DNA of 51,108 bases from Octopus sinensis (Eukaryota), in contig NW_021834292.1 of assembly GCF_006345805.1 (NCBI RefSeq), positions 1 to 51,108 of the forward strand. The letters are read 5' to 3'. The notes under the pieces are model-generated. The model did no database searches. It saw only the letters and a program-made list of their open reading frames with translations, and had not been told where the DNA came from. The translations under genes were made by a program, and so were the position numbers. This document shows, piece after piece, positions 1 through 39,362 of this stretch (its first letter is position 1; each line of letters starts with the position of its first letter).

Positions 1-339
1 TTTTCTGTATGTACGCATGCATATGAATGCTTTTGTGAAGGTGGATGTTCACGTATGCGTATTTCTCCCGAGTGTGTATATATATATATGTATCTGTGCG
101 TCCAAATCTGCGTTCGTGTGTGTGTGTGTGTGTGTGTGTGTGTTGTGTGTGTGTGTTGTGTGTGTAAATATACGTGTGTAATAATAATATCTGTGCGTAA
201 AAAGAAAAAAAGAAAACACCAATTGTGTTGTTGGTCTATTGTACAAGCTTGCCTTTGTTATTATCAATATCACGGTGCGTTTTATGAGAGTCTTATTTAA
301 ATTTTTGTTTGAAGTTCTCTCATTCGTTCTATCGCCCAT

Positions 340-379
<40 letters not shown>

Positions 380-921
380 CTCCTCCTACTTCTCCTTCTC
401 CTTCTCTCTCACTCGGCATATAACATTCTCGCTCTCCCCCTCTCTGCATGTTATAACACATTTAACGCATCCTCGCCCCCCCTCTCACTACACAACCTAC
501 TCTCACTCCAATCTGCTCCTCATTCTCTCCTTCTTTTCCTCTCGTCCATCTCTCTCTCCTCTCTCGCCTTGTTCTTCATTCTGTTTTCAATGAAATCATT
601 AAAAACCTATCAATGAAAACGAAGAAACACAAATGGATAAATTATTAAAATATCTTTTGTGCGGCGGTGGGGGTGGACTTAGGGATGCTGGTGGTGACGG
701 GGATGGTGGCAGTTGACTATTATCATATATCTATGTGTGTATTATCATCTATATGTGTGTGTATGCACGCGTGCGTATATGTGTATGTGTGTGTATATGA
801 ATATATGTATGAATGTACATATACACAAACATGTTAGTTGTGGTTGTAGTTGTGTTTGAGGCGTTGATGGCGGCCGGTGGTAGTTAACAGTTATCGTGTA
901 TTTGTGTGCGCTTGTGCGTGT

Positions 922-960
<39 letters not shown>

Positions 961-1020
961 TGTGTGTGTGTCTGTGTTTTCGTGTGTGTGCGAATACATG
1001 TATGTAAGTACGGACGTACA

Positions 1021-1345
1021 TACGGGCGCGGTCCTGGCTTTGTGGTCAGACGCTTGTGTCTCAGCCACATTCTTTCGGGTTCAGTCCCTCTGCATGGCAC
1101 CTTGAGCAAGCGTTTTCTAGCATGGCTTTTGGCCGACCAAAACCAAGGGAGTGGATTTGATAGACGGAAAATGAAAGAAACTCGCGTGCGCGTGTGAGTG
1201 CGCCTGTGTATGTGTGTGTGTGTGTGTTTACGTCCCCATAACTTAGTGGTTCGAATAGAATAAGTAACAAGCATCCAAAAAAGTACAGGGGTCGTTTCAT
1301 TCGACTAAAAATTCTTGACGGCGATGCTCCAGCATGACCGTAGTA
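1021..1345 (+). mobile_element. tRNA-derived SINE, family B (CORE-like body)
   Basis: B-box-like gggttcagtccc followed by ggcaccttgagcaag. The tail continues through gctccagcatgacc and resumes after the nested insertion at about 1765-1790. Confidence 0.6.
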
Positions 1346-1349
1346 TAAT

Positions 1350-1748
1350 CCTTTCTACTATAGGCACAAGGCCTGGACTTTGTAGGGAAGAGGAGAATCG
1401 ATCACATCAAACCCAGTATTGGACTGGTACTTAATTTATCGACACCGAAAGGATGAAAGGCAAAGTCGACTACGGCGGAATTTGAACTCAGAACGTAACG
1501 GCAGACGAAATACCTATTTCTTTACTACCCACAAGGGGCTACACACATAGGGGAAAAACAAGGACAGTCAAACGGATTAAGTCGATTACATCGACCCCAG
1601 TGTGTAACTGGTACTTATTTAATCGACCCCGAAAGGATGAAAGATAAAGTCGACCTCGGCGGAATTTGAACTCAGAACGTAGCGGCAGACGAAATACCAC
1701 TTAGCATTTCGTCCGGCGTGCTAATGATTCGGCTAGCTCGCCACTTTT
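1350..1748 (-). mobile_element. tRNA-derived SINE family A, two-unit array
   Basis: On the minus strand: A-box head, gagttcaaattcc B box twice, and body cgaggtcgactttgcctttcatcctttcggggtcgat. Flanked by atgac(c/t)gtagtataat at 1334-1349 and 1749-1764. Confidence 0.85.
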
Positions 1749-1886
1749 ATGACTGTAGTATAATGACTGAAACAAGTAAAAAATATAAGCTACACACACA
1801 CACACACACAGTTCTTTTCTTTTTTTACCAAACACGGTAGAATATGATCCGAAGGAGATCAAAGTAGAGGGACTGATCCCATAGAA

Positions 1887-2020
1887 TAGCGTTACTCAAA
1901 GTGGTGGTCTGCGGACCGGTGCCGGTCTGCGAGCCGTCAGTTGCCGGTACGCGGCGAGTTTCCAAGAAAGAAACAATAAAAAATGCTGGCCCCAAATTAC
2001 TGGCCTTGAGCCAAACTTTC
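1887..2020 (+). mobile_element. hAT/Charlie-like DNA transposon left end
   Basis: tagcgttactcaaagtggtggtctgcggaccggtgccggtctgcg resembles Charlie/MER5-type termini (recalled). Preceded by ccatagaa, matching the nnnTAGAn Charlie target. No right end seen. Confidence 0.5.
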
Positions 2021-2054
2021 AAATCGTTATTATTTCTGTTGTTGTTGTTGCGAG

Positions 2055-2221
2055 ATGGCGTAATGGTTAGCATGCTGGAAAAAAATCTATTTTTACGTTC
2101 TGAGCTCACATTTCGCCGAGGTCGACTTTACCTTACATCTTTTCGGGCTCGATTAATTAAGTACCAGTTACGTACTGGGGTCAATGTAATCGACTTAATC
2201 TCTTCCCCAAAATTTGAGGCC

Positions 2222-2223
<2 letters not shown>
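2055..2223 (+). mobile_element. SINE family A, partly deleted head
   Basis: ttctgagctcacatttcgccgaggtcgactttacc...aagtaccagttacgtactggggtc, followed by a (TTA)n tail. Confidence 0.75.
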
Positions 2224-2259
<36 letters not shown>

Positions 2260-2941
2260 GCTGTTGCGTTGGTGTTGGTGGTGGAGTGGCAACGCCATAT
2301 AGCTGAAGTTAGAATCAGTGATTATAATGATGTTTGTTGACGCAGTGATATTTTATTTCTGATTCCGCTTTTATCGTCTTCATTTCATATACAAGTCAGC
2401 CAACATAATTAATTTCACTAGTCATTAATTCATTACCGGAAGATTATATTTATTCAGCCAATCAAAATGAAATGCAAATCTGCTTTGGTTTTATTTCTAA
2501 ACAGTATTTAATCTCTGTATCGATTATGAGTGACTCCCGTGTTATTCATGTCTATAGGGACGCTTGCTTTCACGTTGCTCTGCTTTCGATCCCATGGGGG
2601 TGTCGTCTTCGCTAATATATTCTTAACATAACATCACGTTGACCCAAAATCCGTGAGTGAATTTTGAAGGACGGAAATACTGCGCGCGCGCGTGTGTGTT
2701 TGTGTGTGTCTGAGAGAGAGAGAGAGAGGGAAAGAGTATGTGTGTGTTGCATGTAATTGTGAGTAACACAGACTCACTTCTAAAATGATGTTCATTGAGA
2801 ATTGTGCTTTGCTCAAAAAAAAAGAAAAAAAAGAAAATACTGAATATGGCGGTGCCCCAGCATGGCCACATCTCATAAGCTGAAACTGGAAAAATCAAAT
2901 CAAATCAAATCAATATATATATACATATACATACAAACATG

Positions 2942-2995
<54 letters not shown>

Positions 2996-2998
<3 letters not shown>

Positions 2999-3200
2999 GA
3001 AATTTACAGAAAAACAAAAGAGGAAGACAGGTATATAAACAACAAGCAGGTGTATTAGTTTAACGCTCGGGAAGGTGAGAAAGCCTTTTACGTTTCGAGC
3101 CTACGCTCTTCAACAGAAAGGAACACGAGAAAATAAACAGAAAGAGAATTTTTTAAAAAATACTTTGGGAGTCAGCGATCAATATAAAGAGCTTCAACAC
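2996..3200 (-). mobile_element. Penelope-like element-derived terminal fragment ending in (TA)n
   Basis: Carries the minimal hammerhead and runs into (TA)n on the minus strand. Homologous pieces at 13565-13735 and 21306-21388. Confidence 0.55.
3084..3121 (-). ncRNA. Minimal type I hammerhead motif (Penelope-like), core variant
   Basis: Minus strand reads CCUUU CUGUUGA A GAGC GUAG GCUC GAA ACGU A AAAGG: 5-bp stem I, 4-bp stem II, palindromic ACGU stem III, GUA triplet. Position 6 is U instead of A, and there is an extra A after A9. Confidence 0.65.
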
Positions 3201-3450
3201 AGTTTCCGCTCAGTCAATTTCATTCATAGTGTATTCATTGATAATCATCCCTAAACTGCACACAGAAAAATGTACGCGCCGAAGAATCGAACTCGGAAGA
3301 ATTGAACTCGGAACCTCGTAGTAGAGCCTCCTCCTCTTCTCCCTCTCTCTAAACAAACACGCGTGCGCACACATACATACACATACACTCACACACACAC
3401 ACACACTTAAACTCCCACACATGTAAATATGCATATGTATGTAAACTTTG

Positions 3451-3475
<25 letters not shown>

Positions 3476-3481
<6 letters not shown>

Positions 3482-3985
3482 AGTGAATTGAAGAAATGGA
3501 GTTGAACGAAGATTGAACAGAAATCGTTTATTGCATTCTACACGTGTTTCGAAAGCCACATTTTACCAGAACAGAGGCGCAGCAAAACACATCGAACGAG
3601 GCTCCTAAGAGTTTGGCCATGGGCTCTTAGGAGCCTCGTTCGATGTGTTTTGCTGCGCCTCTGTTCTGTTTTTGCTTTTGCCAACGGATTTCCTATTTCT
3701 TTCTGAAGAGAAAGACACAATATGGTCTCCTTATTCAATCGGAATTTGGTAAAATGTGGCTTTCGAAACACGTGTAGAATGCAATAAAACGATTTCTGTT
3801 CAATCTTCGTTCAACTCCATTTCTTCAATTCACTAATAATATTAAAATTCAATTATCCGCACCAACGCATGGTTGCAACACCATATGGTTGTACCTCCAA
3901 CCGTGCTGTCTTCTGCTGTGATTTTTGCTACCAAGGTATCGGTTAAACTTTTGATTAATCTGCAATAAGATTATTCATCTTTCTA
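3476..3985 (+). mobile_element. Penelope-like terminal repeat fragment with 5' inverted partial copy
   Basis: Contains the canonical hammerhead and ends in (TA)n. 3476-3568 is the reverse complement of 3747-3840 (one indel). 3568-3611 is the exact reverse complement of 3624-3667. Confidence 0.55.
3694..3786 (+). ncRNA. Type I hammerhead ribozyme motif with canonical core (Penelope-like element type)
   Basis: CUGAAGA 3703-3709; stem II GAAAGACACA 3710-3719 pairs with UGUGGCUUUC 3755-3764 (9/10, G10.1-C11.1); GAAA 3765-3768; palindromic stem III ACACGUGU 3768-3775; GUA triplet, predicted cleavage after 3776; interrupted stem I. Confidence 0.75.
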
Positions 3986-3989
3986 TTTC

Positions 3990-4025
<36 letters not shown>

Positions 4026-5034
4026 TACATCTCTATATACATATATATATGTACATGCATATATATGCGTCTGTTTAACTGTGTATGAATGCATTCGTAC
4101 ATGCATATATACTTTGATATAAATGTATGTGTGCATGTGTGTGTGTGCGTATGTATGTGTTGGTAGTGTGTATATTTATATTGTGACGCCTTTTGTTACA
4201 AATCGAATCCTAAATAAATAAGTAACTCCCAAAATCTTCAATGTACTACTTACATTTCATTGAAATGTTTCCAGCCTAAAATGTAATTATCGGCTCCAAC
4301 TTCACAGAGTTTTGCCGCTATGCAGTCGTATTAAACGCCACAATGTTGAAGAAAATAGACATATTATAACAGTTTGAAAAGCAGCAATGATTCGGAAACA
4401 TTACGATCTCTTCTCTTCCGAACCAGTTCACTGATTCACGTTATAAATCTATTGAAACAATTGCCTTAGAGAAGGTGAAATTATGTACTATTTCTGCATG
4501 AAATAACCGTCTTAAGTGTTTCTACTATGCTTCTGACAATGTGATCATACATTTTATTGTCGCCGTCTTATATATCGAAATATTTATGACACCCTCTCAT
4601 GAAGAAATTGCTTTCCACACACACATAAACAAGAGACTATTGTATTTATTTATCTACGTTTTAATAAATTATTAATCCCTTTATAAAACACAATCGGAAG
4701 CACCTCACAAACACACGCACACTCTCGCTCAGACACACCTCTTTATAACTTCTATAACAAACAGCCGAGCTCATCTCAAAGACTGCTATATCTTTTTAAA
4801 GTCCCTTTCTATTGCGCACATTTGCTACAGCTAAAATGTTCTCTTCAGTTCATTGAATTAACACTCAGTTTGTTGTCGCTCGACTGTTAGAAATAGCAGC
4901 TAAATAATTCTCAGGCCATGCCCCAACGTTTTATGTAAAAAAGGTGGAATGTCTAATGTGACCTTTATTTTTCGAGATAGTAGCGAAGTGATTGAAATCA
5001 TTTAGTTTTCCGCTATATAACTCTTGTGGGTCTG

Positions 5035-5215
5035 AATGGCTTAGGGGTTAAGGTGTGCACTCGTAATTATAAGACTGTGGTTTCGATTCCTGGACCAGGC
5101 GATGCAGTGTGTTCTTGATCAAAACACTTCATTTCTCGCTGCTCCATTCCAGTCAGATGGCAAAACGAATAAATCCTGCGATGGAACAGTGTCCCATCAA
5201 GGGATGAGGGAATAT
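5035..5215 (+). mobile_element. tRNA-derived SINE family C
   Basis: B box gtttcgattcctgg followed by gtgttcttgatcaaaacacttcattt. Related copies at 32625-32935 (-), 44060-44335 (-), 45650-45790 (+), 48690-48960 (-), 50550-50850 (-). Confidence 0.6.
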
Positions 5216-5335
5216 ATATGTCACAGAAACTGGTATTGTAAGTCTAGACGACCCGGAACAGAGCTTTTGTCCCATGGCGGTGAATTGGCAGAATTCATAC
5301 AGCGTCTGCTAAAATGTCTTGTGATATTTATTCCG

Positions 5336-6219
5336 AATCTCGACACACTAAATTTCAATCCAACTGGGCCAACTATACCCGGTCATCCTCTCGGCAGTCT
5401 GCAAAATATTGGACCAGGGTACATTGAGGAATTACACTGAGAAAGGATAAATGATTCCGTCACGTTATCGGAGAATTTCTTTAGTTGAATAATTACCTTG
5501 AACTATCAGCACGGAGCTGGGACCGATTCCACAATATATCGTGTCCGATATCACCATCCTAGCACTTTCCTGGTGGTTTGGGTTAATCCAGGGCGGACCA
5601 ACCTGAGACCTGCTTGATACCTTCTTGAAATGCGTTTATTTAAACAAACATTTTGAAAATTTTATCAAAAATTAAAGCTTGTAATGAAAAGTAAAAAAGA
5701 AAGATACTACTGTTTTTGCAATGATAATGTTTCATGTTGAATCAACGATCATTCATTCATTATTGTAATAATGGCAAATCTCGACACACTAAATTTCAAT
5801 CCAACTGGGCCAACTATACCCGGTCATCCTCTCGGCAGTCTGCAAAATATTGGACCAGGGTACATTGAGGAATTACACTGAGAAAGGATAAATGATTCCG
5901 TCACGTTATCGGAGAATTTCTTTAGTTGAATAATTACCTTGAACTATCAGCACGGAGCTGGGACCGATTCCACAATATATCGTGTCCGATATCACCATCC
6001 TAGCACTTTCCTGGTGGTTTGGGTTAATCCAGGGCGGACCAACCTGAGACCTGCTTGATACCTTCTTGAAATGCGTTTATTTAAACAAACATTTTGAAAA
6101 TTTTATCAAAAATTAAAGCTTGTAATGAAAAGTAAAAAAGAAAGATACTACTGTTTTTGCAATGATAATGTTTCATGTTGAATCAACGATCATTCATTCA
6201 TTATTGTAATAATGGCAAA
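5336..6219. repeat. Perfect 441-bp tandem duplication
   Basis: Sequence from 5336 and from 5777 is identical by line-by-line comparison over one full 441-bp period. Confidence 0.95.
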
Positions 6220-6617
6220 GCGGCGAGCTGGCAGAAAAGTTAGTCTTTACGTTCTGAGCTCAAATTCCACCGAGTCGACTTTGTCTTTCCTCCTTTCGGG
6301 GTCGATAAATTAAATACCAGTTGCGTACTGGGGTCGATCTAATCGACTGGCCACCTCCCCCAAAATGTCGGGCCTTGTGCCTAGAGTAGAAAAGAATAAT
6401 AGCAAAGGGACGAGCTGGCAGAAACGTTAGCACGCTGGGCGAAATGCTTAGCGGTATTTCGTCTGTCTTTACTTCCGAGTTCAAATTCCACCGAGGTCGA
6501 CATAACCTTTCATCCTTTCGGGGTCGATAAATTAAGTACCAGTTGAGTACTGGGGTCGATCTAATCAACTAGCCACCTCTCCAAAAATGTCGGGCTTTGT
6601 GCCTAGAGTAGAAAACA
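6218..6617 (+). mobile_element. Two SINE family A copies in tandem
   Basis: Heads gcggcgagctggcag (about 6220) and ggacgagctggcag (about 6408). Both have the family body and a gggc(c/t)ttgtgcctagagtagaa tail. An 18-bp near-identical direct repeat flanks the pair. Confidence 0.85.
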
Positions 6618-7287
6618 ATTATTGTAATAATAGCATGAGAATGTAAAATGCCTTCACTTCTGTCAGCAGTGCTCTATTCTCGTAGCACGCGTATGTAGTT
6701 TTATAATTGTAAACAAACGAAAAGTATGAAAAATCCTTGATTCTGTAATTTGATTATTTGACTATTAGTGCATAAAGTATACAAGCAGCCCTCAAAAAAC
6801 TTTTTGCGATTACAGTGACCAGGAATGTAATTCGACTTGGCCATGCCTGGGTTAATCACTCAAACAGAAAATCTTTCCATTCAATCAGGCCAGTATGCTG
6901 AGATAGGCCCTTGAGGAGTGTAAAGATGCTGGCAACGGCATGCTTAGGCTTTCATCCAGCAACGGATCGAGACCGATTAATTGCGATATATTTTTGCTAT
7001 GGATTCTTTGGTTTCCAATGATGACTGCAAAACAGCAGCTTCGGCAATATTGACTGTCTGGTTAGGAATCTTTATGATGTGCGATCAAGTCCTGGCAAAG
7101 TTCGCTTTACCCTTTACCTTTTCAGGCTTAATAAGATGTGCTTCTGTCAAATGATGTGGTGGGGGTACGTCTGATAGAAAAGAACAATACGGGCTCCCTC
7201 AAAACTTTATGGACCTGTCCCTATATAAGAGCTCATTATTATTTTACTTTCTAACTTGTGTATGTGTGTGTATGTGTGTGTGTGTAT

Positions 7288-7342
<55 letters not shown>

Positions 7343-7623
7343 TGTTAAATTTTATATCGATTATTATTGTCTATCTTGTTTGCTGAGGAAATTTCCAGCG
7401 TATCACGTAGTTATGTGGCTACGGCATGAGATAACCAATGTGTTTGTGTATGTCGTTATATGTATGTTTGTGTGTGTGTGTGTGTGTGTACATGTGTATG
7501 TAAGTGTGTGAGTGTTGCTTTTTCGATGACACCCTAGTTTGTCATATTCCCTTATAGCCATCAGTCACAACTAAGTCTCACTCCGTGTGGCTATGTAATA
7601 ATGCGAAAGAGCGAGAGCGAGCA

Positions 7624-7667
<44 letters not shown>

Positions 7668-7949
7668 TGTGTGTATGAGTGTGTGCGTGTGTTGTTCATT
7701 CATGTATGTGAATGTGTGTACTGAATTGTTAATTATCATTTTAATTTGTAAAGGAAGTTAGATTGTAAATATCTAATTTGGTTTATCTCTCGTTTCGGTT
7801 TAGTTTTAGTTTTAGGGAATGCAAAGACAAAAACGCAAACAAAAGACACCTACATGACATTTTTATATCGATGTTTTAGCGATCCGCTCAGTCATCGCTC
7901 TTCGAGGAAACTTAAGACAAATAGTTCTCAAAGTATGAATGATGAAAAA

Positions 7950-8251
7950 AAATATGGAATTAGTAATACTGACAGCAACAAGAACAACAACAACAGCAGT
8001 AGCAGCAGCAGCAACTTCAGCAATAATAGCAACTACACCGACAACAACAACAGCAGCAGCAATAATAATAATAATGATAATAATGGATAGCCAACGTAGC
8101 TGAGATGTGAGAATGTTATCCCCAACACCACCACCACCACCAACAACAACAAACCATCACCAACACCAGCACCACCATCACCACTATCGTCATCATCATC
8201 ATCATCATCATTATCGTCATCATGATTGTCGGCGTTCTTGCCATCATCGTC

Positions 8252-8318
<67 letters not shown>

Positions 8319-8920
8319 TCTTCCTCGCCACCATTAACATCATCATCATCATCATCATCATTATCATAAACATCACCGACTCCATCATCCCTCTTCGCCC
8401 CCCCCCCCTCACACCCCCATCCGATCATCATATCACCATTAGCAACTGCGAGAGCAGTGCCTTCTTTATAGTAATTCTCCTCATCACCATGTCTGTCTTC
8501 CCTGCTACTGTCATCACCATCACCATCACCACCACCACCACCACCGCTGCCGCTGCCACCGTCACCATCACCGCCGCCATCGTCACTGCCATCACGGCTG
8601 ACGACCATTAATCCGTTTCGAAATATTAATGATATCCATCACAAAGCCGAAACTAATTAATCTAGGTTATAGTTCATATTAACGCCTTTTACCTGAGTGA
8701 TGTAATAGCAGAGCAGATTGTAATCGATTTGCGCTTATGAATAAGCGGAGATTCGTATCGATAATGAAAACGACGACGACGACGACGATAACGACCAAGA
8801 GCCAAGGAAGAGAGCCACGCTGATGATGATGATGATGATGATGATGGAGATGGCGGTGGTGGCGGCGGCGGTGGTGATGACGATGATGACGATGGGGATG
8901 AAGTTGATGATGACGCCAAT
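7950..8920. repeat. Compound trinucleotide low-complexity block (AAC/AGC/ATC/GTC/ACC/GAT/GGC)
   Basis: Visible runs. It produces His-, Asp-, Ile- and Met-rich ORFs in several frames on both strands. Confidence 0.85.
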
Positions 8921-9119
8921 AATGATTTCCAACATAATCACAAGATCACACGCTTTCCAGGATGGAACGGTCGATTAAATCTATCTCAGTATTTGACTGG
9001 TACTTTGTCACACACACATCCACACACACAGACACATGCGCGCGCTCGCGCGTACACAAACACATACATGTACATCATGCATACACACACAAACAGGTTC
9101 TTGCACAAAGCTATATGTC

Positions 9120-9145
9120 AATATCTATCTATCTATCTATTTATT

Positions 9146-9182
<37 letters not shown>

Positions 9183-9350
9183 CTGTCTATATTTATCTAT
9201 CTATATTTATCTATCTATCTATTATCTATATATATATATCTATATCTATCTATCTCTCTATCTTTACCTATCTATCTATCTATTTATCTATATATATCTA
9301 TCTATTTACTAATATATTTCCATCTATCTATACCTATCTATCTATCTATC

Positions 9351-9387
<37 letters not shown>

Positions 9388-9402
9388 TTATCTATCTATC
9401 TG

Positions 9403-9433
<31 letters not shown>

Positions 9434-9435
9434 CC
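9120..9435. repeat. (TATC)n/(TA)n tract
   Basis: Direct inspection. Confidence 0.9.
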
Positions 9436-9569
9436 ATATACATATTCATACATATATGAACGTATGCATATATATGTGGGTGTATGTGTGTGTAGTCTTA
9501 ATAATAGTTGGTAGTACAACTACTGACTACACTTGTAGGTGTAAATACTTTTACTGTGTTTATAAGCTG

Positions 9570-9990
9570 TGTATCCGTGGACAGTTCAGTGCTCGGTCAC
9601 TGATGCAATTCTGACATATCATTGAAATTCCAATATACAATTGTTCGGCTGATTTCTCTTATTAACACACAGTGTTTCCAGTCCATTGTCTCATGTCGTC
9701 TGTCCACAAACATCTTTCATGTCTTCTCGGCATCTTCCCTTCAACAATTCCTGTCATGATAGTCTTAGCTAGTGGCACGTGGTGCATTGTATGCGCAAAA
9801 TATGATAACTTGATGGACTTGTTTCTCGACAATGCGTTTCTTTTGATTTTCAGCTTTTCTAGTACTGCAGCGTTTGTTACCGTATCCTTTCAATTTAACC
9901 TGCTCAATCCGCGGAAGATCCATATCTCGAATGCTTCTGTCTTTTCCTTTATTGTTGTTCATATTGTCTATTGTTTAACTCATAATAATA
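9570..9990 (-). mobile_element. RTE-clade LINE C-terminal fragment (decayed)
   Basis: Minus frame reads EAFEIWIFRGLSRLN*KDTVTNAAVLEKL...KLSYFAHTMHH..LAKTIMTGIVEGKMPRR..CLWTDDMRQWTG, matching the RTE post-RT motifs (EAFEMW, YFGH, G.VEGKR, W.D.IK.W). Confidence 0.75.
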
Positions 9991-10062
9991 TTAAATCAAA
10001 TGTTTATTCCAATTATATAAGGCAATTGAAGAAATGGCCTTTATTTCTCGTATTATCTATAA

Positions 10063-10380
<318 letters not shown>

Positions 10381-10617
10381 TAATAGAACGGTGTTATTGT
10401 TGTTCTTCTTACAGTTGTTCTTTAATACCGAAGCAGTTCCAGTCAAGCGAATGTATAATCAAAGACAACAAATTCTAACTATCCTGTATATATCTTATAT
10501 AACTGTGTTTGTCCGGGAATACGTTGGCCAACGAGTCACTTCTTATGTAAGACAGTTATTGTATAACTAGGGGGAGATTCGGCAGTTATTTACAAAAGGT
10601 CGAATGATGGAGTAGAG

Positions 10618-10760
10618 CAGAGGTTCTCAAACTTTTTGAGCCACCGTCTCCCTCATGGCCACATAATACCCCCAGCGCCCCCACCCCTATATTTTATATT
10701 TTACTAATTTATATATACTTTGAATCATTTAATATTTAATATATTATATAATTTGTATAC
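10618..10760 (+). mobile_element. hAT/Charlie-like left terminus in the Barhl intron
   Basis: cagaggttctcaaactttttgagcc terminus preceded by gagtagag (nnnTAGAn). No right TIR found. Confidence 0.45.
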
Positions 10761-11173
10761 AATACTATAATATGCATTGTTATTCCAAAGAGTTACATCA
10801 CACTATAAAAAATATGAAAAGTACATGTAGTATTACCCATAATAATAGGTATATCATATCTCCCTGAGAAAGTGTATTTGTAAAATTTCGTAACTAAATT
10901 GGCGTGTAGGGGATCATTGGATTTCGAAATACAATGCATACGGCTGAAGAGAGCTTTAAACCATCTTTTATATCTATTATACACTAATGTAAGAACAGGT
11001 CGTTTATAAAGCTTGAAACACGTGTACCGCGACATCCTTTTTGTTCTGTTTTTGTTTTCCCAGAATCGATAAATGAAGCACTACTCGAGTGCTGAAATCG
11101 ATTTAATCGACCGTTCCTTTCCCTATAACTTGTGGCCATTTTTTCATGTTAGAAACCATTCTTTTCTCTACTT

Positions 11174-11570
11174 AAGACAGTGAACTTGGAGAATCGTTGG
11201 ACGAAATGCTTAGTGATATAGCGTTTTGGCTTTCAACGCGCAGACGTCAAATTCTGCTGAGATCAACTTAGCGATTCGTCCTTTCGCACTTTGATAAAAA
11301 AAGTAGCATTGAGGTACTGGAGTCCATGTATTCAATTAGCTCCTCCCTATAAATTTCCCGACTTTGTGCCAAAATAGGAAATTATTTGAAGCGGTAAGGT
11401 GGCAGAATCGCTAGCGTGACGGGAAAATGATTAGTGGCATTTTTCAGGCTCTTTAAATTCTGAGTTCAAATTCCGCCGAGGTCAACTTTACCTTTTATCA
11501 TTTCAAGGATTAGGCTCCATGTATTCGACTTACCCCATCCCTCAAAATCGTTGATCATGTGACAAAATTA
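11174..11570 (+). mobile_element. Two decayed SINE family A copies in the Barhl intron
   Basis: gaaatgcttag...caaattctgctgagatcaac and gtggcagaatcgctagc...ctgagttcaaattccgccgaggtcaac. Confidence 0.7.
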
Positions 11571-11627
11571 AAAAAAAAATTGTATCACTACTTGACTTAC
11601 ATGGCTTTTTTTTGTTTTCTTTTACAG

Positions 11628-11916
11628 AACTAAATGGAAACGGCAGACAGCCGTTGGACTAGAATTGCTCGCAGAGGCTGGTAATTATGCAGCAGTTCAG
11701 AGGATGATCCAAGCTAACCCTTACTGGTCAATTCATTATCCGCAGGCTGCTAGCATCATCTCTAATCTGGATGCTTTATACCTGAGATACAGCGGAACAA
11801 ACAGCATCCAAGGTCAACGACCCATGCTGCCTCGCACTTTAATGACGACAGGTGGTCTACAAACAAATTACGGGCATTTTCCATCACCTCAGGTTTTTTC
11901 TGATCACCGGAGTTAA
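11628..11916 (+). CDS. Barhl: BarH/BARHL homeobox gene, terminal coding exon
   Basis: Polypyrimidine tract and tttacag acceptor end at 11627. CG+A rebuilds Arg53, then the frame reads TKWKRQTAVGLELLAEAGNYAAVQRM..., the Bar-specific post-homeodomain motif. Stop TAA at 11914-11916. Confidence 0.95.
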
Positions 11917-14954: not shown

Positions 14955-15204
14955 AAGAAGAATTCCTTTTATAATCATTACAATAAGGACATTGTAGAAA
15001 TTGCACATAATAAACAATAGTAAAATAATTAGGAGCGACTAAATCGCTTTATTTGTAAATATATGATAAAAATAATTTGATTTTTATAAAATTACAAACA
15101 AAATAATAAATAAATAAAAGCAAAGAAAATATACAAACAAAACAACAAATGAACCAAATAAGCATATATCTAAAATGAAAAAAAAACAAAATAAATACTG
15201 CATA

Positions 15205-15685
<481 letters not shown>

Positions 15686-16166
15686 TAATAATCTGAGACT
15701 CAAAATGATGGTAATCATCATTATAGCAATGATGGTGTTATTTAGCATTAATCGTAATGATAAAGTATCGGATCGATTTCTATATTTGCCAGGAGGGCAA
15801 GAAATAAAACTTTATAGAAGATATTTAAATACACTGGTGAACACAAACACATTTATGGATGGACATAAAAATCATCAATTCCAAAGAGACCATAAAGTAC
15901 AGCAACAACCATAACAACAACAACAACAGCAATAATTGCGAAGATGACGATAAAGAGATGACAAAAACAACGGTAAAATCGTTTTAAATATTTAACAAAC
16001 GATTGCAAATCGAATGTTAATTTTCGATTCAATTAACTAAGAGACGAAGCAAACCATTCGGAACTAGGTTCATTGTAATTGAGCCGGAAGTAGGCCCTCA
16101 GACGAGACAGATGAAATAAACAGAACGGGAAGAGAACGAGAAAGAGATGGAGAGACTGAGACTGAG

Positions 16167-22400: not shown

Positions 22401-22815
22401 CTACCAAAAACTGAGCAAATATAAAGATCTTGAAATAGAAATCAGCAAAATGTGGAACCTGAAGACTAAAACAATACCTGTTGTCATAGGTGCCCTGGGA
22501 ATGATAGCAAAAGGGGCTGATTGATACCTAACTCAGATACCAGGATACCCCAAAATGGCAGAAATTCAAAAGATAGTGCTCATGGGAACTGCTCATATCC
22601 TACGCAAAATACTTTCTATATAATCTCAAGTTTTAAAACAAACATAATTTTCGTATGTTTCTTTTAGACATTCACCAGTACAACACTAAGTACAAAACCA
22701 AATATATGGCACCCTAGGCATAAGACCAACACGAACTTCAAAATTGATGTTTCTTGAGGTTTCTGGGTGAGACCTGGAGCCAGCTTGTGCAAATGTAAAG
22801 CAAAAGTCAAACATA

Positions 22816-22817
<2 letters not shown>
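22401..22817 (+). mobile_element. Dong/R4-clade LINE, 5'-truncated 3' end
   Basis: KLSKYKDLEIEISKMWNLKTKTIPVVIGALGMI..GAD*YLTQIPG...EIQKIVLMGTAHILRKILSI* is the end of a restriction-like endonuclease domain, followed by a 3' UTR. (AAT)n on both sides. Confidence 0.85.
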
Positions 22818-22872
<55 letters not shown>

Positions 22873-22875
22873 GAA

Positions 22876-22906
<31 letters not shown>

Positions 22907-22980
22907 AAGAAGAAGAAGAAGAAGAAGAAGAAGAAGAAGAAGAAGAAGAAGAAGAAGAAGAAGAAGAAGAAGAAGAAGAA
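22818..22980. repeat. (AAT)n switching to (AAG)n
   Basis: Direct inspection. The same switch occurs at about 14885-14960. Confidence 0.9.
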
Positions 22981-23104
22981 TTTCAACTATTTGACACCAA
23001 GGCGAAGACTGAATGGGATGATGCAAAGACCGACATAAAGTGTGGGTGTTTATATATAATGAAATGATAAAAGGATTATTTAAAGAAGTAAGTACACACA
23101 GTAT

Positions 23105-23395: not shown

Positions 23396-23464
23396 GTATA
23401 CAAAAGTTAAATAACAACAACAACGACAACAATAATGATGATGATTATAATAATAATAATAATG

Positions 23465-23545
<81 letters not shown>

Positions 23546-23546
23546 C

Positions 23547-23600
<54 letters not shown>

Positions 23601-23614
23601 TGATGATGATGATG

Positions 23615-24218
23615 ATTTCAAATTGATGGGTTATGTCGATTACATCGACCCCAGTGTTTAGCTGGTACTTGTTTTATCGACACCAATAGGATGAAAATTA
23701 AAGTTGACACAAGCGGCATCTGAACTCAGAACGTAATGGCAAATGATATGTCGCTTAGCATTTTTCTCCGGAAGTGCTAAAAATAATAATGCCAGCTCGA
23801 ATAATAATGGTCTCGAATTTTTGACACAAGGTCAGCAATATCAAGATACTTCTTTCGTCGACCCCGAATTGATGAAGGGCAAAGGCGACCTCGATGAAAT
23901 TTGAACTTAGAACGTAAAGACGGACGAAATGGCGCTTAGTATTTTGCCCAGTATGCTAACGATTCAGCCAAAACAACAACAACAACGACGACAACAACAA
24001 CTATCATTTGTACTTGAGGCACAAGGTCTGAAATTTGTGGGGAGGGGACTAGTCGATTGAATCGACCCCATTGTTTCACTGGTACTTAATTTATCGACTC
24101 CGAAACGATGAAAGGCAAAGTCAACCTCGGTGGAATTTGAACCCAGAACGTAGCGACGGGCGAAATACTGCTAAGCATTTTGTCCACCGTGCTAGCGATT
24201 CTGCCAGCCCGCCGCCTT
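23615..24218 (-). mobile_element. Three SINE family A copies in a row
   Basis: gaactcagaacgta / gaacttagaacgta / gaacccagaacgta B-box reverse complements near 23725, 23905 and 24140. The copy at 24015-24218 has a full head. Confidence 0.75.
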
Positions 24219-24231
24219 ACATAAAAATAAA

Positions 24232-24298
<67 letters not shown>

Positions 24299-24351
24299 GA
24301 GTAATAATAATAATAATAATAATAGTAATAGTAATAATAATGATAATGATA

Positions 24352-24385
<34 letters not shown>

Positions 24386-24398
24386 TATAATAATAATA

Positions 24399-24454
<56 letters not shown>

Positions 24455-24486
24455 CATAATAATTAAGATAATGACTGATAATAATG

Positions 24487-24527
<41 letters not shown>

Positions 24528-24540
24528 TATGATGATGATG

Positions 24541-24609
<69 letters not shown>

Positions 24610-24618
24610 TTAATAATG

Positions 24619-24670
<52 letters not shown>

Positions 24671-24672
<2 letters not shown>

Positions 24673-27250
24673 GAGTGACAAGAAGACGTACAACATAAAT
24701 GCAGACTGGATTATACAAACTGAAGGATCCTACCAAAATTTACAACAACAAGCATGGGAAGACATCACAATAGCAGACCTAAGAAAGGCACTCACGAAGG
24801 CCCATAATTGGAAATCCCCCGGTAAAGATAGGGTGCCGAATTTCTGGCTCGCATCGCTCCCATGCGCACACGGTAAGCTAGTTCAGCTGCTCAATGGAAT
24901 TATGAGAGACCCAAAGAAAACACCTGAATGGTTAGCAAGTGGCATTACTTACCTACTCCCAAAGAATAACGAAACCAACCTTCCAAAAAACTATCGGCCT
25001 ATAACCTGTCTATCCACCACGTATAAAATCCTAACATCTATCCTGGCGGAGAAAACATATGCATTCATGGAGAAGAACGATATTTTCCCCATTGAACAAA
25101 AAGGGTGCCGCCGAGGCTCTTACGGATGCAAAGATCAACTGCTAATCAATCGTATGATCCTTGAGAACTGTCACAACAAGCGCAGAAATCTCAGCACCGC
25201 ATGGATTGACTAGAAAAAGGCCTTCGACAGTATACCGCATCCATGGATCTTGAGATCGCTGGACATCTTCAAAATTTCCCCTGTGATTTCAAACTTCCTG
25301 AAGCACAATATGTCGTTGTGGAATACCACTCTAATTATACCACTCTAATGGAGTACTTGCCTCAGAAAATATAAACATCAACTGCGGAATTTTTCAAGGT
25401 GACTCACTTTCACCTTTAATATTCTGCATAGCCCTAATACCCCTTACAAGTGAATTAAACAGAACAGGGTATGGGTATAAAATTACCAATAAAAAAATAA
25501 GCCATCTATTTTATATAGATGACTTAAAACTTTATGGTAAAGACAATAATGAACTTGAAGGCCTATTGCGCACCGTGAAAGCATTCAGCGATGACATCGG
25601 GATGGAGTTTGGACTTGAGAAGTGTGCCAAGGCCACTTTCCAGAAAGGGAAAGTGAAGACCACAAATTCAGTCGTGTTAGATGTTGACACAGTCATAAGA
25701 GTGCTTGAGCAAGAACAAACATACAAATATTTAGGGATAAATGAAGGCTCTGGTATTCAGCATGCAAGCATGAAAGAGAAAACCAGGAAGGAATGTCATA
25801 GGAGAGTTCGTGCAGTCCTGAAATCTGAACTAAATGCACGTAACAAGGTGTTAGCTATAAATTCCTTAGCAGTTCCAGTTGTTACTTATAGCTACAATGT
25901 GTTGAACTGGAATATGAGTGAAGTAAAGAATATAGATAGAAAAATACGCAATCTGCTGAGCTGTAATAGGATGCACCACCCAAAGGCAGACGTAGATCGC
26001 CTTTACCTTCCCAGAGCCCAAGGAGGTCGAGGCCTGATCCAATTTGAACTAGCTTACAAAACAACCACAATTGCACTGGCCAAATATCTCGAAATATCGA
26101 ATGACTGGATGCTAAAGCTCGTGGAAAATCACGAGAGACGAAAGAAGCTTCATTCTATCATAAAGGAAAGCAAAAAATTTGCTATTGATCTCGTGCAGGA
26201 TACCCAAACTGAACAACCCGAGGGAAGTACGGCAACTATTGTTGCAAAGAAGGTGAAAATGATGGCAATGAAAAAAGCGCACGAGCAATCGGCTGATAGG
26301 TGGGAGGAGAAACCTCTGCACGGCAAATATGTGACCCGCAGCAAACAAGCTGATGTTGACCAGAAGCAAACCCATCAGTGGCTACGGAGCTCAGGGCTAA
26401 AAGCAGAGAGCGAAGGTTTCATCCTGGCTGCTCAAGATCAAAGCCTATTAACCCGGAACTACCAGGCCAATGTGATGAAAAATGGAGCAGACCCAAAATG
26501 CCGATTCTGCAACGACATGATTGAAACAGTGGACCACCAAATCTCTGGAAGTAAAGTCTTAGCACCAGTGGAGTATAAATTAAGACATGACAGAGTTGGC
26601 CAATGTCTCCACTGGCTAATAAGTCGGCATTACAATATCGAAACTGCCGACAAGTGGTATAATCACCACCCTGAGGCTGTAACTGAAGGAGAAAATGTAA
26701 CCATTCTGTGGGACTTTCCAGTACATACAGACCGAACCATCAAGGCCAATAAACCAGATATTGTTGTGAAAGACCAAAACAATAAAGTTTGCTTATTGAT
26801 CGACATGAGCATCCCCTGTGATCATAATATCTCAGCGAAAGAGTTTGACAAGCTCAGAAAATATAATGACCTACTCATTGAAATTGAGAAAATGTGGCAC
26901 CTCAAGGCGGTTACAATACCAGTGATCGTAGGAGCACTAGGAATGATCAAGAAGGGAACCGAAAATTATATGAGAATGATCCCTGGCTTACCATCCCTGC
27001 AAGAAGTGCAAAAGATTTCTTAACTGGTACATCACACGTATTGAGAAGAGCATTGTCGATGTGAGAACTGTTGCTGCTCATGTATTTTAATTTAACTTAA
27101 AAAAAAAATTAAAAAAAAAAAAAATGAACGAACTACTGAGTTTGGTTTAATGGCCTACCAATGTATACTATGAGTTTCTTTGCCCTAGGAGTCGGGAAGA
27201 CACTCGGCAAGAAATGGAAGCAAATTTGAAAGAAGAAAAAAAAAATAATA
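24671..27250 (+). mobile_element. Dong/R4-clade non-LTR retrotransposon, 5'-truncated (RT + CCHC knuckle + restriction-like endonuclease)
   Basis: WKSPGKD, YRPITCL, EQKGC, WID*KKAFDS (stop at 25211), frameshift near 25333, GIFQGDSLSP, HLFYIDDLKL, CRFC..H, WDFPV.TD...NKPDI, IDMSIP, K..KY, frameshift near 27020. (AAT)n at both ends. Confidence 0.93.
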
Positions 27251-27328
27251 ATAATAATAATAATAATAATATTAATAGTGGGGAGTATTAACATGTAACC
27301 TCGCAGGGGAAATATATACGTTCCTTGC

Positions 27329-27817
27329 GGAAAACAATCTTCTGCCAATAGAATAAAAGGGATGCCGAAAAGGATCCGACAAGGTTTTATAATGGAGAAC
27401 TGTAAACGGTACCAAAAAAAAAAAAATAGGCATGGTCTTGTTAGACTTCAAAGATGCTTATGACATGTGGGCCGCATTCAGCATCAATAGATATATCTTC
27501 CAAGGGAGATACATCTATTGATTGTTACCTCGGCTAAGTGCTGGTTGTTACAGGATAGACGCGTTTTCCGACTAGGCATGCTGTTCTTAATCAGTGCAGA
27601 CACGTTCATAGCTATTCCACACATGTCGAGTGTTTCCAAAATACACAAATGCGGCAACATGTCATAAGCATTTTTGAAGTCTATCAAGGCCATGCATATG
27701 TTTTTTTGGTACCGTTTACAGTTCTCCATTATAACCTTGTCTATCACATGATGGTTCTTGGTGCTCATGAATCCTTTTCGGCATCCCTTTTGTTCTATTG
27801 ACAGAAGATTGTTTTCC
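27329..27817. mobile_element. Fold-back (palindromic) pair of Dong/R4 RT fragments
   Basis: The minus arm encodes DKVIMENCKRYQKNICMALIDFKNAYDMLPH. The plus arm is a deleted inverted copy. Pivot at 27502-27503. Confidence 0.75.
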
Positions 27818-27849
27818 TCTGTTATTTGTTATAGCCTTGATCACACTCT

Positions 27850-39330: not shown

Positions 39331-39362
<32 letters not shown>

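What the first reader, a model, noticed from the sequence alone, without database searches (positions are those of the whole stretch)
3694..3786. Hammerhead ribozyme with a fully canonical core upstream of a BarH gene
Seen: CUGAAGA, 9/10-bp stem II starting G-C with a loop region of about 35 nt, GAAA, 8-nt palindrome ACACGUGU and a GUA triplet (cleavage predicted after 3776). Established: this layout matches type I hammerheads in Penelope-like terminal repeats. It is on the same strand as the gene. If the unlocated first exon lies further upstream, this is a potential self-cleaving site inside the pre-mRNA (inference). Stem I is imperfect (3 bp, an internal loop, then 4 bp).
Basis: partly seen in the sequence, partly recalled or inferred. 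Interest (0 to 1): 0.75.

Follow-up and report, generated by a model that had tools for sequence, protein, structure and literature searches.

The report
Retroelement-type hammerhead motifs in Barhl locus
The hammerhead ribozyme motif is really there and has a diverged sister copy inside an intron of the BarH-like gene, but both look like single, probably near-inactive leftovers of a hammerhead-carrying mobile element, which is common in invertebrate genomes.

Summary
The motif at 3694-3786 (+) is exactly as described: CUGAAGA, a 9/10-bp helix II, GAAA, the ACACGUGU palindrome and A17 at 3776. None of 300 shuffled windows gave a comparable motif. I found a second motif (HHR2, 10934-11035, +) with the same core boxes and the same helix III. 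Its helices I and II have different sequences but still pair: 7 of 13 pairs are compensatory. So this is a real hammerhead family, not chance. Rfam does not recognise either copy.

HHR1 lies in a 369-bp near-perfect foldback (3474-3842) next to a (TA)n microsatellite. The 3' half of HHR1 sits in the right arm. The left arm lacks a 78-nt piece that holds the 5' half. A transcript through the whole element folds into one hairpin (-261 kcal/mol) that locks HHR1 shut. HHR2 sits, in sense, in the intron between the two homeobox exons of the BarH-like gene, just upstream of a SINE array.

Long helix II, short helix I and a 2-bp palindromic helix III match the minimal, dimer-dependent hammerheads of Penelope-like elements. 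The inverted-copy and microsatellite layout also fits. No RT/GIY-YIG ORF or tandem partner is present. Verdict: a new member of a known kind, of low to moderate interest.

The parts
3694..3786 (+). HHR1, a complete type I hammerhead motif. Helix I 5' strand 3694-3702; CUGAAGA 3703-3709; helix II 3710-3719 with 3755-3764; loop II 3720-3754; GAAA 3765-3768; helix III ACACGUGU 3768-3775; A17 at 3776; helix I 3' strand 3777-3786.
   Evidence: Sequence read. Descriptor scans. My own covariance model R1 scores it 41.6 bits.
3474..3842 (.). 369-bp foldback element that holds HHR1. Left arm 3474-3611, central loop 3612-3623, right arm 3624-3842. The arms are complementary except for one 1-nt indel and a 78-nt segment present only in the right arm.
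   Evidence: the repeat finder pairs I1, I2 and I4, each 100% complementary. Self-BLAST. RNA fold of -261.3 kcal/mol, z = -36.9.
3669..3746 (+). 78-nt segment found only in the right arm. It carries the helix I 5' strand, the CUGAAGA box, the helix II 5' strand and most of loop II. Its absence from the left arm leaves only half a hammerhead on the minus strand.
   Evidence: Arm comparison. A TG dinucleotide sits at both deletion borders (read directly from the sequence).
3531..3576 (-). Half hammerhead in the left arm: GAAACACGUGUA at 3539-3550 plus the helix I 3' strand. There is no CUGANGA box and no helix II.
   Evidence: the DNA search. R1 scores it 18.5 bits.
3447..3477 (.). (TA)n microsatellite directly abutting the left end of the foldback.
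10934..11035 (+). HHR2, the second type I hammerhead motif. Helix I CGG 10941-10943 with CCG 11027-11029, plus a distal AUG 10934-10936 with CAU 11033-11035. CUGAAGA 10944-10950; helix II GAGCUUUA 10951-10958 with UAAAGCUU 11007-11014 (8 bp, first pair G.U); loop II 48 nt; GAAA 11015-11018; ACACGUGU 11018-11025; A17 at 11026.
   Evidence: Descriptor scans. Sequence. R1 scores it 31.6 bits. Pair counts.
3662..3683 (+). T-rich block TGTTCTGTTTTTGCTTTTGCCA, 20 nt upstream of HHR1. A near-identical block lies downstream of HHR2 at 11042-11062. TTCTGTT also occurs at exactly +18..+24 after both cleavage sites (3794-3800 and 11044-11050).
   Evidence: Local alignment score 32 against a maximum of 30 in 200 shuffles. 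Positions read. This is only suggestive of a once-tandem unit.
10136..10355 (+). BarH-like gene, exon carrying the first part of the homeobox (...[54 protein letters not shown]).
   Evidence: Pfam Homeodomain, E = 9e-22. Homologues. Splice signals cag| and |gtat.
11626..11913 (+). BarH-like gene, last coding exon (RTKWKRQTAVGLELLAEAGNY... to the stop codon). Together with the previous exon it defines the intron, about 10356-11625, that contains HHR2.
   Evidence: tblastx gives 92.6% identity to two other Barhl loci. Translation.
11063..11581 (+). Array of one 5'-truncated and two full units of a tRNA-like SINE. It starts 37 nt after the HHR2 cleavage site.
   Evidence: nhmmer with a profile of 15 window copies: E = 1.6e-11, 1.6e-25 and 3.6e-31. 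BLAST.

Best explanation
HHR1 and HHR2 are two diverged members of one family of minimal type I hammerhead ribozymes. The family belongs to a hammerhead-carrying retroelement, most likely the terminal-repeat region of a Penelope-like element or a short non-autonomous derivative of one.

In the parent element, tandem copies of the motif would pair through the self-complementary ACACGUGU to build a long intermolecular helix III. This is the double-hammerhead arrangement, and it would let the element's multimeric transcript cut itself into unit lengths.

What the window holds are isolated, truncated insertions:
- HHR1 is a 219-nt 3'-terminal fragment joined head-to-head to an inverted copy of itself that lacks 78 nt. 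It is inserted at a (TA)n microsatellite.
- HHR2 is a solo fragment in intron 2 of the BarH-like gene.

As single copies with a 2-bp helix III they are expected to cleave little or not at all. HHR1 is additionally locked in a 138-bp hairpin in any read-through transcript. No role for the host gene is implied.

Shown: the motif, its statistics, covariation between the copies, the foldback, the intron position and the fold energies. Inferred: the retroelement origin, the dimer mechanism and the lack of activity.
For: - Motif and core are intact at both sites.
- No shuffle out of 300 gave a comparable motif. Two motifs were seen where 0.025-0.037 are expected per window.
- GAAACACGTGTA occurs 3 times against 0.2 expected.
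- Between HHR1 and HHR2 the core and helix III are identical, while 7 of 13 helix pairs change on both sides and stay paired (3/3 in helix I, 4/8 in helix II). 96% of cells are paired, against 23-62% when partners are slid.
- The architecture matches the published PLE minimal-hammerhead description: helix II of 7-8 bp or more, short helix I, small palindromic helix III, mostly single scattered motifs, sometimes two on opposite strands 100-700 bp apart, and very variable sequences within one genome (PMC4209133).
- PLE insertions are 5'-truncated, often with an adjacent inverted 5'-truncated copy that creates inverted repeats. They prefer microsatellites such as (TA)n and carry the hammerhead near the 3' end (PMC8557442). 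HHR1's foldback next to (TA)n has exactly this layout.
- The monomer hammerhead folds are 9 kcal/mol (HHR1) and 5.5 kcal/mol (HHR2) above the MFE. The ACACGUGU duplex is worth -12.3 kcal/mol and appears in the cofold MFE of HHR1+HHR1 and HHR1+HHR2.
- The foldback hairpin of -261 kcal/mol buries HHR1's 3' half.
- Four other Barhl loci (about 20 kb each), from distant animals, have no such motif.
Against: - No RT or GIY-YIG coding remnant within 1.4 kb of HHR1 in any frame, and none in the ORF list. The only RT in the window is LINE-like, at 24.8-28.3 kb.
- There is no tandem partner and no third full copy in 51 kb.
- Rfam hammerhead models give no hit, even at E<=10.
- The unpaired nucleotide between A9 and 10.1 that is typical of PLE minimal hammerheads is absent, and HHR2 starts helix II with G.U instead of G-C.
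- Loop II (35 and 48 nt) is much longer than in published examples.
- A TA target duplication of a DNA-transposon MITE cannot be excluded at the foldback ends.
- The genome of origin could not be reached, so family size and full-length parents are unknown.
Confidence: 0.6

Rival explanations
1. The motifs belong to a short non-LTR retrozyme or SINE-like hammerhead repeat, not to a Penelope-like element. In this reading a unit of roughly 130-150 nt (T-rich block, hammerhead, next T-rich block) was once tandem and made small circular RNAs. The window holds broken single units.
For: - The T-rich block lies 5' of HHR1 but 3' of HHR2 (score 32 against a shuffle maximum of 30).
- TTCTGTT sits at exactly +18 after both cleavage sites.
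- No PLE coding sequence is nearby.
- A 2-bp helix III with a tetraloop is typical of invertebrate retrozyme hammerheads, and their RNAs are highly self-paired (PMC7229834).
- HHR2 abuts a SINE array.
Against: - No tandem repeat of the unit at either site.
- Retrozyme hammerheads are canonical (helix II about 4 bp, loop 1-loop 2 contacts) and their units are 170-400 nt.
- HHR2 is not homologous to the SINE head, and the HHR1 element gives no SINE hit.
- The weaker upstream and downstream similarities are not significant.
Confidence: 0.2
2. A chance or incidental hammerhead-like sequence inside a DNA-transposon MITE or foldback element with 95-nt terminal inverted repeats and a TA target duplication. 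It has no ribozyme history.
For: - Long near-identical inverted repeats with TA at both ends.
- Half of the motif is simply inverted-repeat sequence.
- Rfam is silent.
- The hammerhead fold is far from the MFE.
- A box-only search of metagenomes shows that chance matches with short stems do occur. One such match lies in a bacterial coding gene.
Against: - HHR2 has the same boxes and helix III with fully different yet paired stems, and it has no foldback and no TIR homology.
- No shuffle out of 300 reached the observed stringency.
- There is no other copy of the supposed MITE in the window.
Confidence: 0.08
3. An exapted, functional ribozyme pair. HHR1 and HHR2, on the same strand 7.25 kb apart and flanking the homeobox exon, share an identical self-complementary helix III. 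Within one Barhl pre-mRNA they could form a double hammerhead and cut the transcript, which would regulate the gene.
For: - HHR2 is certainly intronic and in sense.
- Both cores are intact.
- The predicted HHR1+HHR2 cofold uses the intermolecular ACACGUGU duplex.
- Conserved intronic hammerheads exist in amniotes (established knowledge; PMC6155905 is listed).
Against: - It is unknown whether HHR1 is transcribed with the gene, because exon 1 was not found.
- HHR1 is sequestered in a -261 kcal/mol hairpin.
- Minimal hammerheads of this kind cleave poorly even as dimers.
- No motif is present in four other Barhl loci.
- The transposon-debris context fits better.
Confidence: 0.04

Closest known systems
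Minimal type I hammerheads of Penelope-like elements (Cervera & de la Pena 2014, PMC4209133)
   Same: - Canonical core.
- Long helix II (8-10 bp) and a short helix I (3 bp, then an internal loop).
- A small palindromic helix III, implying action as a dimer.
- Mostly solitary scattered copies with very variable stems.
- Sometimes paired on opposite strands.
- Insertion layout with an inverted truncated copy at a (TA)n site (PMC8557442).
   Different: - No flanking RT/GIY-YIG ORF or direct terminal repeat in the window.
- No unpaired base between A9 and 10.1.
- G.U at 10.1-11.1 in HHR2.
- Loop II of 35-48 nt is unusually long.
Canonical metazoan type I hammerheads of non-LTR retrozymes and satellite repeats (newt, Schistosoma Sm-alpha, mussel, coral; Rfam RF00163)
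   Same: Type I topology, the same core, and a 2-bp helix III capped by a palindromic tetraloop. Cleavage is dimer-dependent when helix III is weak.
   Different: - Those sit in tandem repeats of 150-450 bp and have a 4-bp helix II and a 6-bp helix I with loop-loop contacts.
- Here there is no tandem array.
- Here helix II is long with a large loop.
- Here no Rfam hit is obtained.
Conserved intronic hammerheads of amniotes (HH9 and HH10 in RECK, DTNB and C10orf118/CTCL)
   Same: Sense-strand position inside an intron of a protein-coding gene (HHR2).
   Different: - Those are stable monomers with tertiary contacts and are ultraconserved at orthologous sites.
- Here helix III is 2 bp and the context is transposon debris.
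- No conservation was seen in other Barhl loci.
- Rfam HH9 and HH10 give no hit.
Foldback / MITE-type inverted-repeat elements
   Same: 369-bp element with about 95-138-nt near-identical inverted arms and a possible TA duplication.
   Different: No second copy in the window. The arms carry hammerhead sequence that also exists without any foldback at HHR2. The 78-nt asymmetry is unlike a MITE.

Membership tests
Hammerhead ribozyme, type I | Conserved core C3 U4 G5 A6 N7 G8 A9 ... G12 A13 A14 ... A15.1-U16.1, with H17 not G | tested here: met
   CUGAAGA, GAAA, A-U closing pair and A17 are present in both HHR1 and HHR2.
Hammerhead ribozyme, type I | Three helices around the core, with helix I open and helices II and III closed, supported by covariation | tested here: met
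   25 of 26 cells are paired and 7 of 13 pairs are compensatory between the two copies. Slid controls give 23-62% paired. Only two sequences were available.
Hammerhead ribozyme, type I | G10.1-C11.1 base pair | tested here: inconclusive
   G-C in HHR1, G.U in HHR2.
Hammerhead ribozyme, type I | Score at or above the Rfam model threshold (RF00163 and clan members) | tested here: not met
   No hammerhead family at gathering score over the whole window. None at E<=10 on 3600-3850 or 10900-11070. The long loop II and short helices I and III may explain this, but I could not test that.
Hammerhead ribozyme, type I | Mg-dependent self-cleavage 3' of H17 | not testable with these tools
   Needs transcription assays. 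Predicted monomer folds are 5.5-9 kcal/mol above the MFE.
PLE minimal hammerhead | Long helix II (6-8 bp or more), short helix I, palindromic 15.2-16.2 / loop 3 | tested here: met
   Helix II is 9/10 bp and 8 bp, helix I is 3 bp plus 3-4 distal bp, and helix III is the ACACGUGU palindrome. The criteria come from PMC4209133.
PLE minimal hammerhead | Unpaired nucleotide between A9 and 10.1 | tested here: not met
   Helix II starts directly after A9 in both copies (bulge = 0).
PLE minimal hammerhead | Location in the direct terminal repeats of an element encoding RT plus GIY-YIG endonuclease | tested here: not met
   No Pfam domain in six frames of 2300-5300. The ORF list has only LINE-like RVT_1 at 24.8-28.3 kb. 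Truncated solo copies are common for PLEs, so this weakens but does not exclude a PLE origin.
PLE minimal hammerhead | PLE insertion layout: 5'-truncated copy with an adjacent inverted truncated copy, a microsatellite target, and the hammerhead near the 3' end | tested here: met
   Met for HHR1 only. Inverted 138-nt copy plus direct 219-nt copy, abutting (TA)n, with the hammerhead ending 66 nt from the right end. The criteria come from PMC8557442.
Metazoan non-LTR retrozyme | Hammerhead in head-to-tail tandem repeats of 150-450 bp | tested here: not met
   No direct repeat family of that kind at either site. Only a short T-rich block hints at a former tandem.
Conserved intronic hammerhead (HH9/HH10 type) | Sense intronic position conserved at orthologous loci | tested here: inconclusive
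   HHR2 is intronic and in sense. No motif was found in four other Barhl loci, but these come from distant animals. No close relative of the source species could be reached.
MITE / foldback DNA transposon | Terminal inverted repeats, target-site duplication and many homogeneous copies | tested here: inconclusive
   Inverted repeats are present. A TA at both ends is possible but lies inside TA-rich sequence. There is no other copy in the window or in the collections searched.

The most novel reading that the evidence does not exclude
The two same-strand motifs, which share an identical self-complementary helix III and bracket the homeobox exon, act together within the BarH-like pre-mRNA as a split double hammerhead. 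They would cut the transcript or release an exon-containing RNA. That would be an invertebrate case of transposon-derived ribozymes recruited to control a developmental homeobox gene.
Probability: 0.03. Interest if true: 0.8.

Novelty: new member of a known kind. Interest (0 to 1): 0.25.

Why it matters
Hammerhead motifs of this minimal, dimer-dependent kind occur in the thousands in many invertebrate genomes, as parts of Penelope-like elements and related repeats. Another pair in a gene's non-coding DNA is therefore expected.

The useful points are practical:
- Rfam models miss this variant entirely, so annotation pipelines would overlook the family.
- The pair gives a clean small example of core conservation with stem covariation.
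- The HHR1 foldback shows how an insertion can disarm its own ribozyme.

Only if the motifs proved conserved and active in the BarH-like pre-mRNA would this bear on gene regulation.

Tried and rejected
1. Rfam, at gathering score on the whole window and at E<=10 on both motif regions: no hammerhead hit, only noise.
2. Looking for other copies of the HHR1 element.
- Window self-BLAST found none.
- The 77-aa ORF across the element, searched against the protein collection, gave no candidate.
- The 21-mer of the repeat arm gave 0 matches in metagenome and viral contigs.
3. Box pattern CTGAAGAG-N40-70-GAAACACGTGTA in metagenome contigs gave 13 hits, all without helix II.
- One passes a loose descriptor but lies antisense in a bacterial arginase-family gene.
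- One (L012) is in an intron of a eukaryotic GPCR-like gene. It has a 7-bp helix I and a shared 9-mer but no helix II, so it is unresolved.
- Rejected as evidence.
4. Identifying the organism or reaching its genome.
- The exact-protein look-up of the LINE ORF failed.
- The best BarH hits are 83% identical and come from distant animals.
- The LINE ORF has one 96% hit on a 2-kb sewage-metagenome contig.
- Literature string searches for the SINE found nothing.
5. Finding Barhl exon 1 by tblastx and by the FIL/EH1 motif: not found in 1-10100.
6. Idea that HHR2 is a mutated SINE head: rejected, score below the shuffle mean.
7. Idea that 3843-4000 is a further degenerate copy of the element: not significant.
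8. Idea that degenerate hammerhead 3' halves lie upstream of both motifs: scores are at shuffle level.
9. ARAGORN found no tRNA or tRNA-like gene.
10. A first fuzzy-regex script timed out.

Full report
**Observation.**
- CUGAAGA is at 3703-3709.
- Helix II is GAAAGACACA (3710-3719) paired with UGUGGCUUUC (3755-3764): 9 of 10 pairs, opening with G-C, closing a 35-nt loop.
- GAAA is at 3765-3768, and the 8-nt palindrome ACACGUGU at 3768-3775.
- A17 is at 3776.
- Helix I is 3 bp (UUU/GAA, one of them G.U), then a 2x3 internal loop, then 4 bp (UAUU/AAUA).
- In a monomer the palindrome gives a 2-bp helix III with an ACGU tetraloop.

**Is it more than chance?** I wrote a type I hammerhead descriptor and ran it on both strands of the window and on dinucleotide-preserving shuffles.
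- At the stringency of the observed motif it hits only this site, and none of 300 shuffles. That stringency was helix II of at least 5 contiguous bp opening with G-C, helix III of at least 2 bp, and helix I of at least 3 bp.
- At a looser setting shuffles give 0.037 hits per window, while the real window gives two.
- A second descriptor, modelled on the published minimal hammerhead (palindromic helix III, optional bulge), again finds exactly these two against 0.025 per shuffle.
- The 12-mer GAAACACGTGTA occurs three times where 0.2 are expected.

**A second copy.** The extra hit, HHR2, is on the same strand at 10934-11035.
- CUGAAGA is at 10944-10950.
- Helix II is GAGCUUUA/UAAAGCUU (8 bp, first pair G.U) around a 48-nt loop.
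- GAAA is at 11015, with the same ACACGUGU and A17 at 11026.
- Helix I is CGG/CCG, then an internal loop, then AUG/CAU.

The core boxes, N7 = A, helix III and H17 are identical to HHR1. The two helices have unrelated sequences yet still pair. On a gap-free alignment with loop II trimmed (A1), 25 of 26 cells form standard pairs. Seven of 13 pairs differ on both sides (3/3 in helix I, 4/8 in helix II). Sliding the 3' partners by 1-3 columns drops pairing to 23-62%. A covariance model built from the two (R1) and run without filters over the window finds three things and nothing else above noise:
- HHR1 at 41.6 bits;
- HHR2 at 31.6 bits;
- one half-copy at 18.5 bits.

Conserved core plus compensatory stems is the signature of a real hammerhead family. 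With only two sequences it is an indication, not a statistical proof.

**Rfam.** Neither copy is recognised. There are no matches at gathering score anywhere in the window, and no hammerhead family even at E<=10 on 3600-3850 or 10900-11070. I think the long loop II and the short helices I and III are the reason, but I could not test that.

**Context of HHR1.**
- The left arm (3474-3611) is the reverse complement of the right arm (3624-3842), around a 12-nt centre.
- There are two exceptions: a single 1-nt indel, and a 78-nt segment (3669-3746) that exists only in the right arm.
- That segment holds the helix I 5' strand, the CUGAAGA box, the helix II 5' strand and most of loop II.
- The rest of the hammerhead lies in repeat-arm sequence. 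So the left arm carries only a half hammerhead on the minus strand (3531-3576).
- The deletion borders share a TG.
- The element directly abuts a (TA)n run (3447-3477).
- An RNA spanning 3465-3850 folds into a single near-perfect hairpin of -261 kcal/mol (z = -37). In it, the helix II 3' strand, the GAAA box, helix III, the cleavage site and the helix I 3' strand are all paired to the left arm.
- In any read-through transcript HHR1 is therefore thermodynamically shut.
- No Pfam domain is found in any frame of 2300-5300.

**Context of HHR2 and the gene.**
- The homeobox exon is 10136-10355. This rests on Pfam Homeodomain at 9e-22, the splice signals and the homologues.
- The next exon starts at about 11626 (RTKWKRQTAVGLELLAEAGNY...) and runs to a stop at 11913. 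It is 92.6% identical to two other Barhl loci.
- HHR2 therefore lies in sense in the middle of this 1.27-kb intron. The 'ribozyme inside the pre-mRNA' idea is true for HHR2.
- For HHR1 it stays open. Neither tblastx against four other Barhl loci nor a search for the FIL/EH1 motif located a first exon in 1-10100.
- Thirty-seven nucleotides after the HHR2 cleavage site begins an array of one truncated and two full units of a tRNA-like SINE. The same SINE occurs, often in arrays of 2-3 units, at nine or more other places in the window.
- HHR2 itself is not homologous to the SINE head, and the HHR1 element gives no SINE hit.

**Shared flanks.** Apart from the core, the two loci share a T-rich block, TGTTCTGTTTTTG(C/-)TTTT(G/C)CCA. 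It lies 20 nt upstream of HHR1 (3662-3683) but 16 nt downstream of HHR2 (11042-11062). Its alignment score is 32 against a maximum of 30 in 200 shuffles. TTCTGTT also sits at exactly +18..+24 after both cleavage sites. This hints that the parent carried the motif in partial tandem (block, hammerhead, block). The evidence is thin, and other similarities I thought I saw were at shuffle level.

**Energetics.**
- As monomers the hammerhead folds are not favoured. The best structures containing the three helices are -6.6 kcal/mol (HHR1) and -10.5 kcal/mol (HHR2), against MFEs of -15.6 and -16.0 kcal/mol.
- In HHR1 a local hairpin (CUUUCU/AGAAAG) sequesters the CUGAAGA box.
- The self-complementary ACACGUGU gives an 8-bp intermolecular duplex of -12.3 kcal/mol. 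It is used in the predicted cofold of HHR1+HHR1 and of HHR1+HHR2.
- This is the classic double-hammerhead arrangement.

**Comparison with what is known.** Cervera and de la Pena (PMC4209133) describe the minimal hammerheads of Penelope-like elements as follows:
- they have a longer than usual helix II (7-8 bp);
- they have a small palindromic helix III;
- they are built to work as dimers;
- they are nearly inactive in vitro as single motifs, and weak even as dimers;
- they are extremely variable within a genome;
- they are mostly scattered as single motifs from truncated elements;
- they sometimes occur as two motifs on opposite strands 100-700 bp apart.

Craig et al. (PMC8557442) describe PLE insertions as 5'-truncated partial tandems. 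These often have an inverted 5'-truncated copy next to them that creates inverted repeats. They show a bias for microsatellites including (TA)n, and the hammerhead sits near the 3' end. HHR1's foldback at a (TA)n run fits this closely.

The differences are these:
- no RT/GIY-YIG ORF or direct terminal repeat in the window;
- no unpaired base between A9 and 10.1;
- G.U at the base of helix II in HHR2;
- very long loops II.

The canonical retrozyme and satellite hammerheads share the 2-bp helix III with a tetraloop. However, they sit in tandem arrays and have a 4-bp helix II with loop-loop contacts (PMC7229834). That membership test is not met here.

**Relatives elsewhere.** I could not reach the genome of origin.
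- The element's longest ORF has no protein relatives.
- A 21-mer of the arm is absent from metagenome and viral contigs.
- A box pattern found 13 metagenome contigs that lack helix II. One lies in a bacterial coding gene, which is a reminder that box-only matches do arise by chance. One is in a eukaryotic intron and remains unresolved.
- The best BarH matches are 83% identical and come from distant animals whose loci share only the exons.
- None of those four loci has a hammerhead motif.
- The organism is an unidentified invertebrate with a very microsatellite-rich, 65% A+T genome. Anything more specific would be a guess.

**Conclusion.** These are genuine members of the hammerhead family, of the minimal, dimer-dependent kind associated with Penelope-like and related retroelements. 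They are present as isolated insertion debris, one in a self-inactivating foldback upstream of the homeobox exon and one in an intron. Such motifs are abundant in invertebrate genomes, so the finding is a new member of a known kind.

The rivals are:
- a retrozyme-like rather than PLE parent (about 0.2);
- an incidental motif in a MITE (about 0.08);
- a recruited regulatory ribozyme pair (about 0.04).

The genome-wide, biochemical and comparative tests listed under the next steps would separate them.

Noticed in passing
window 1352-1747(-), 2086-2195, 6215-6620, 11063-11581, 23635-24211(-), 30356-30799(-), 30841-31383, 32291-32451, 43363-43900, 46154-46334(-), 50924-51101: A tRNA-like SINE of about 215-240 nt. 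Its consensus contains GGCAGAATCGTTAGCACG...GAGTTCAAATTCCGCCGAGGTCGAC...GGGGTCGATAAAATAAGTACCAG. It occupies at least 11 places in 51 kb, unusually often as head-to-tail arrays of 2-3 units. ARAGORN and Rfam do not call it.
   Followed up: partly
window 24833-28329: Fragments of a LINE-like retrotransposon: weak RVT_1 hits, and a 485-aa ORF at 25566-27023 with a C-terminal zinc-binding-type region. A second, partial copy lies in both orientations at 27484-28329. One 96%-identical protein occurs on a 2-kb contig of a sewage metagenome (ERZ22666216). The next relatives are at most 66% identical and come from shrimp, fish and cnidarians.
   Followed up: partly
window 3474-3842: If transcribed, the foldback would form about 138 bp of almost perfect double-stranded RNA, a possible substrate for editing or small-RNA pathways. 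A palindrome this perfect could also be an assembly artefact and should be checked in raw reads.
   Followed up: no
window 3976-3992 and 10016-10037: Short sequences resembling the outer end of the foldback arms (TTAGTGAATTGAAGAAATGG). One lies next to another (TA)n run at 3993-4021, and one lies just upstream of the homeobox exon. The similarity is weak (80-86% over about 20 nt).
   Followed up: partly
whole window, e.g. 8033-8611, 9000-9600, 15049-15750, 22700-23000, 23400-24700, 39200-39630, 46380-46870: Exceptionally high density of microsatellites and low-complexity runs: (TA)n, (CA)n, (AAT)n, (ATC)n-like and (CTAT)n. These create many long spurious ORFs. A+T is 65%.
   Followed up: no
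L012 937-1016 (+), contig JAAUYJ010030157.1: A eukaryotic metagenome contig carrying a GPCR-like gene has, in an intron, CUGAAGAG...GAAACACGUGUA with a 7-bp helix I. It also shares the 9-mer TTCAATCGG with HHR1's loop II, but it has no helix II. It may be a decayed relative or a coincidence.
   Followed up: partly
window 10136-10355: The homeodomain reads QLHCLEKSF where other BarH-like proteins have QL(Q/A/N)(T/Q)LE(K/R/S)(S/N)F. No database protein exceeded 95% identity over the homeodomain part. This points to a divergent paralogue or a poorly sampled lineage.
   Followed up: no
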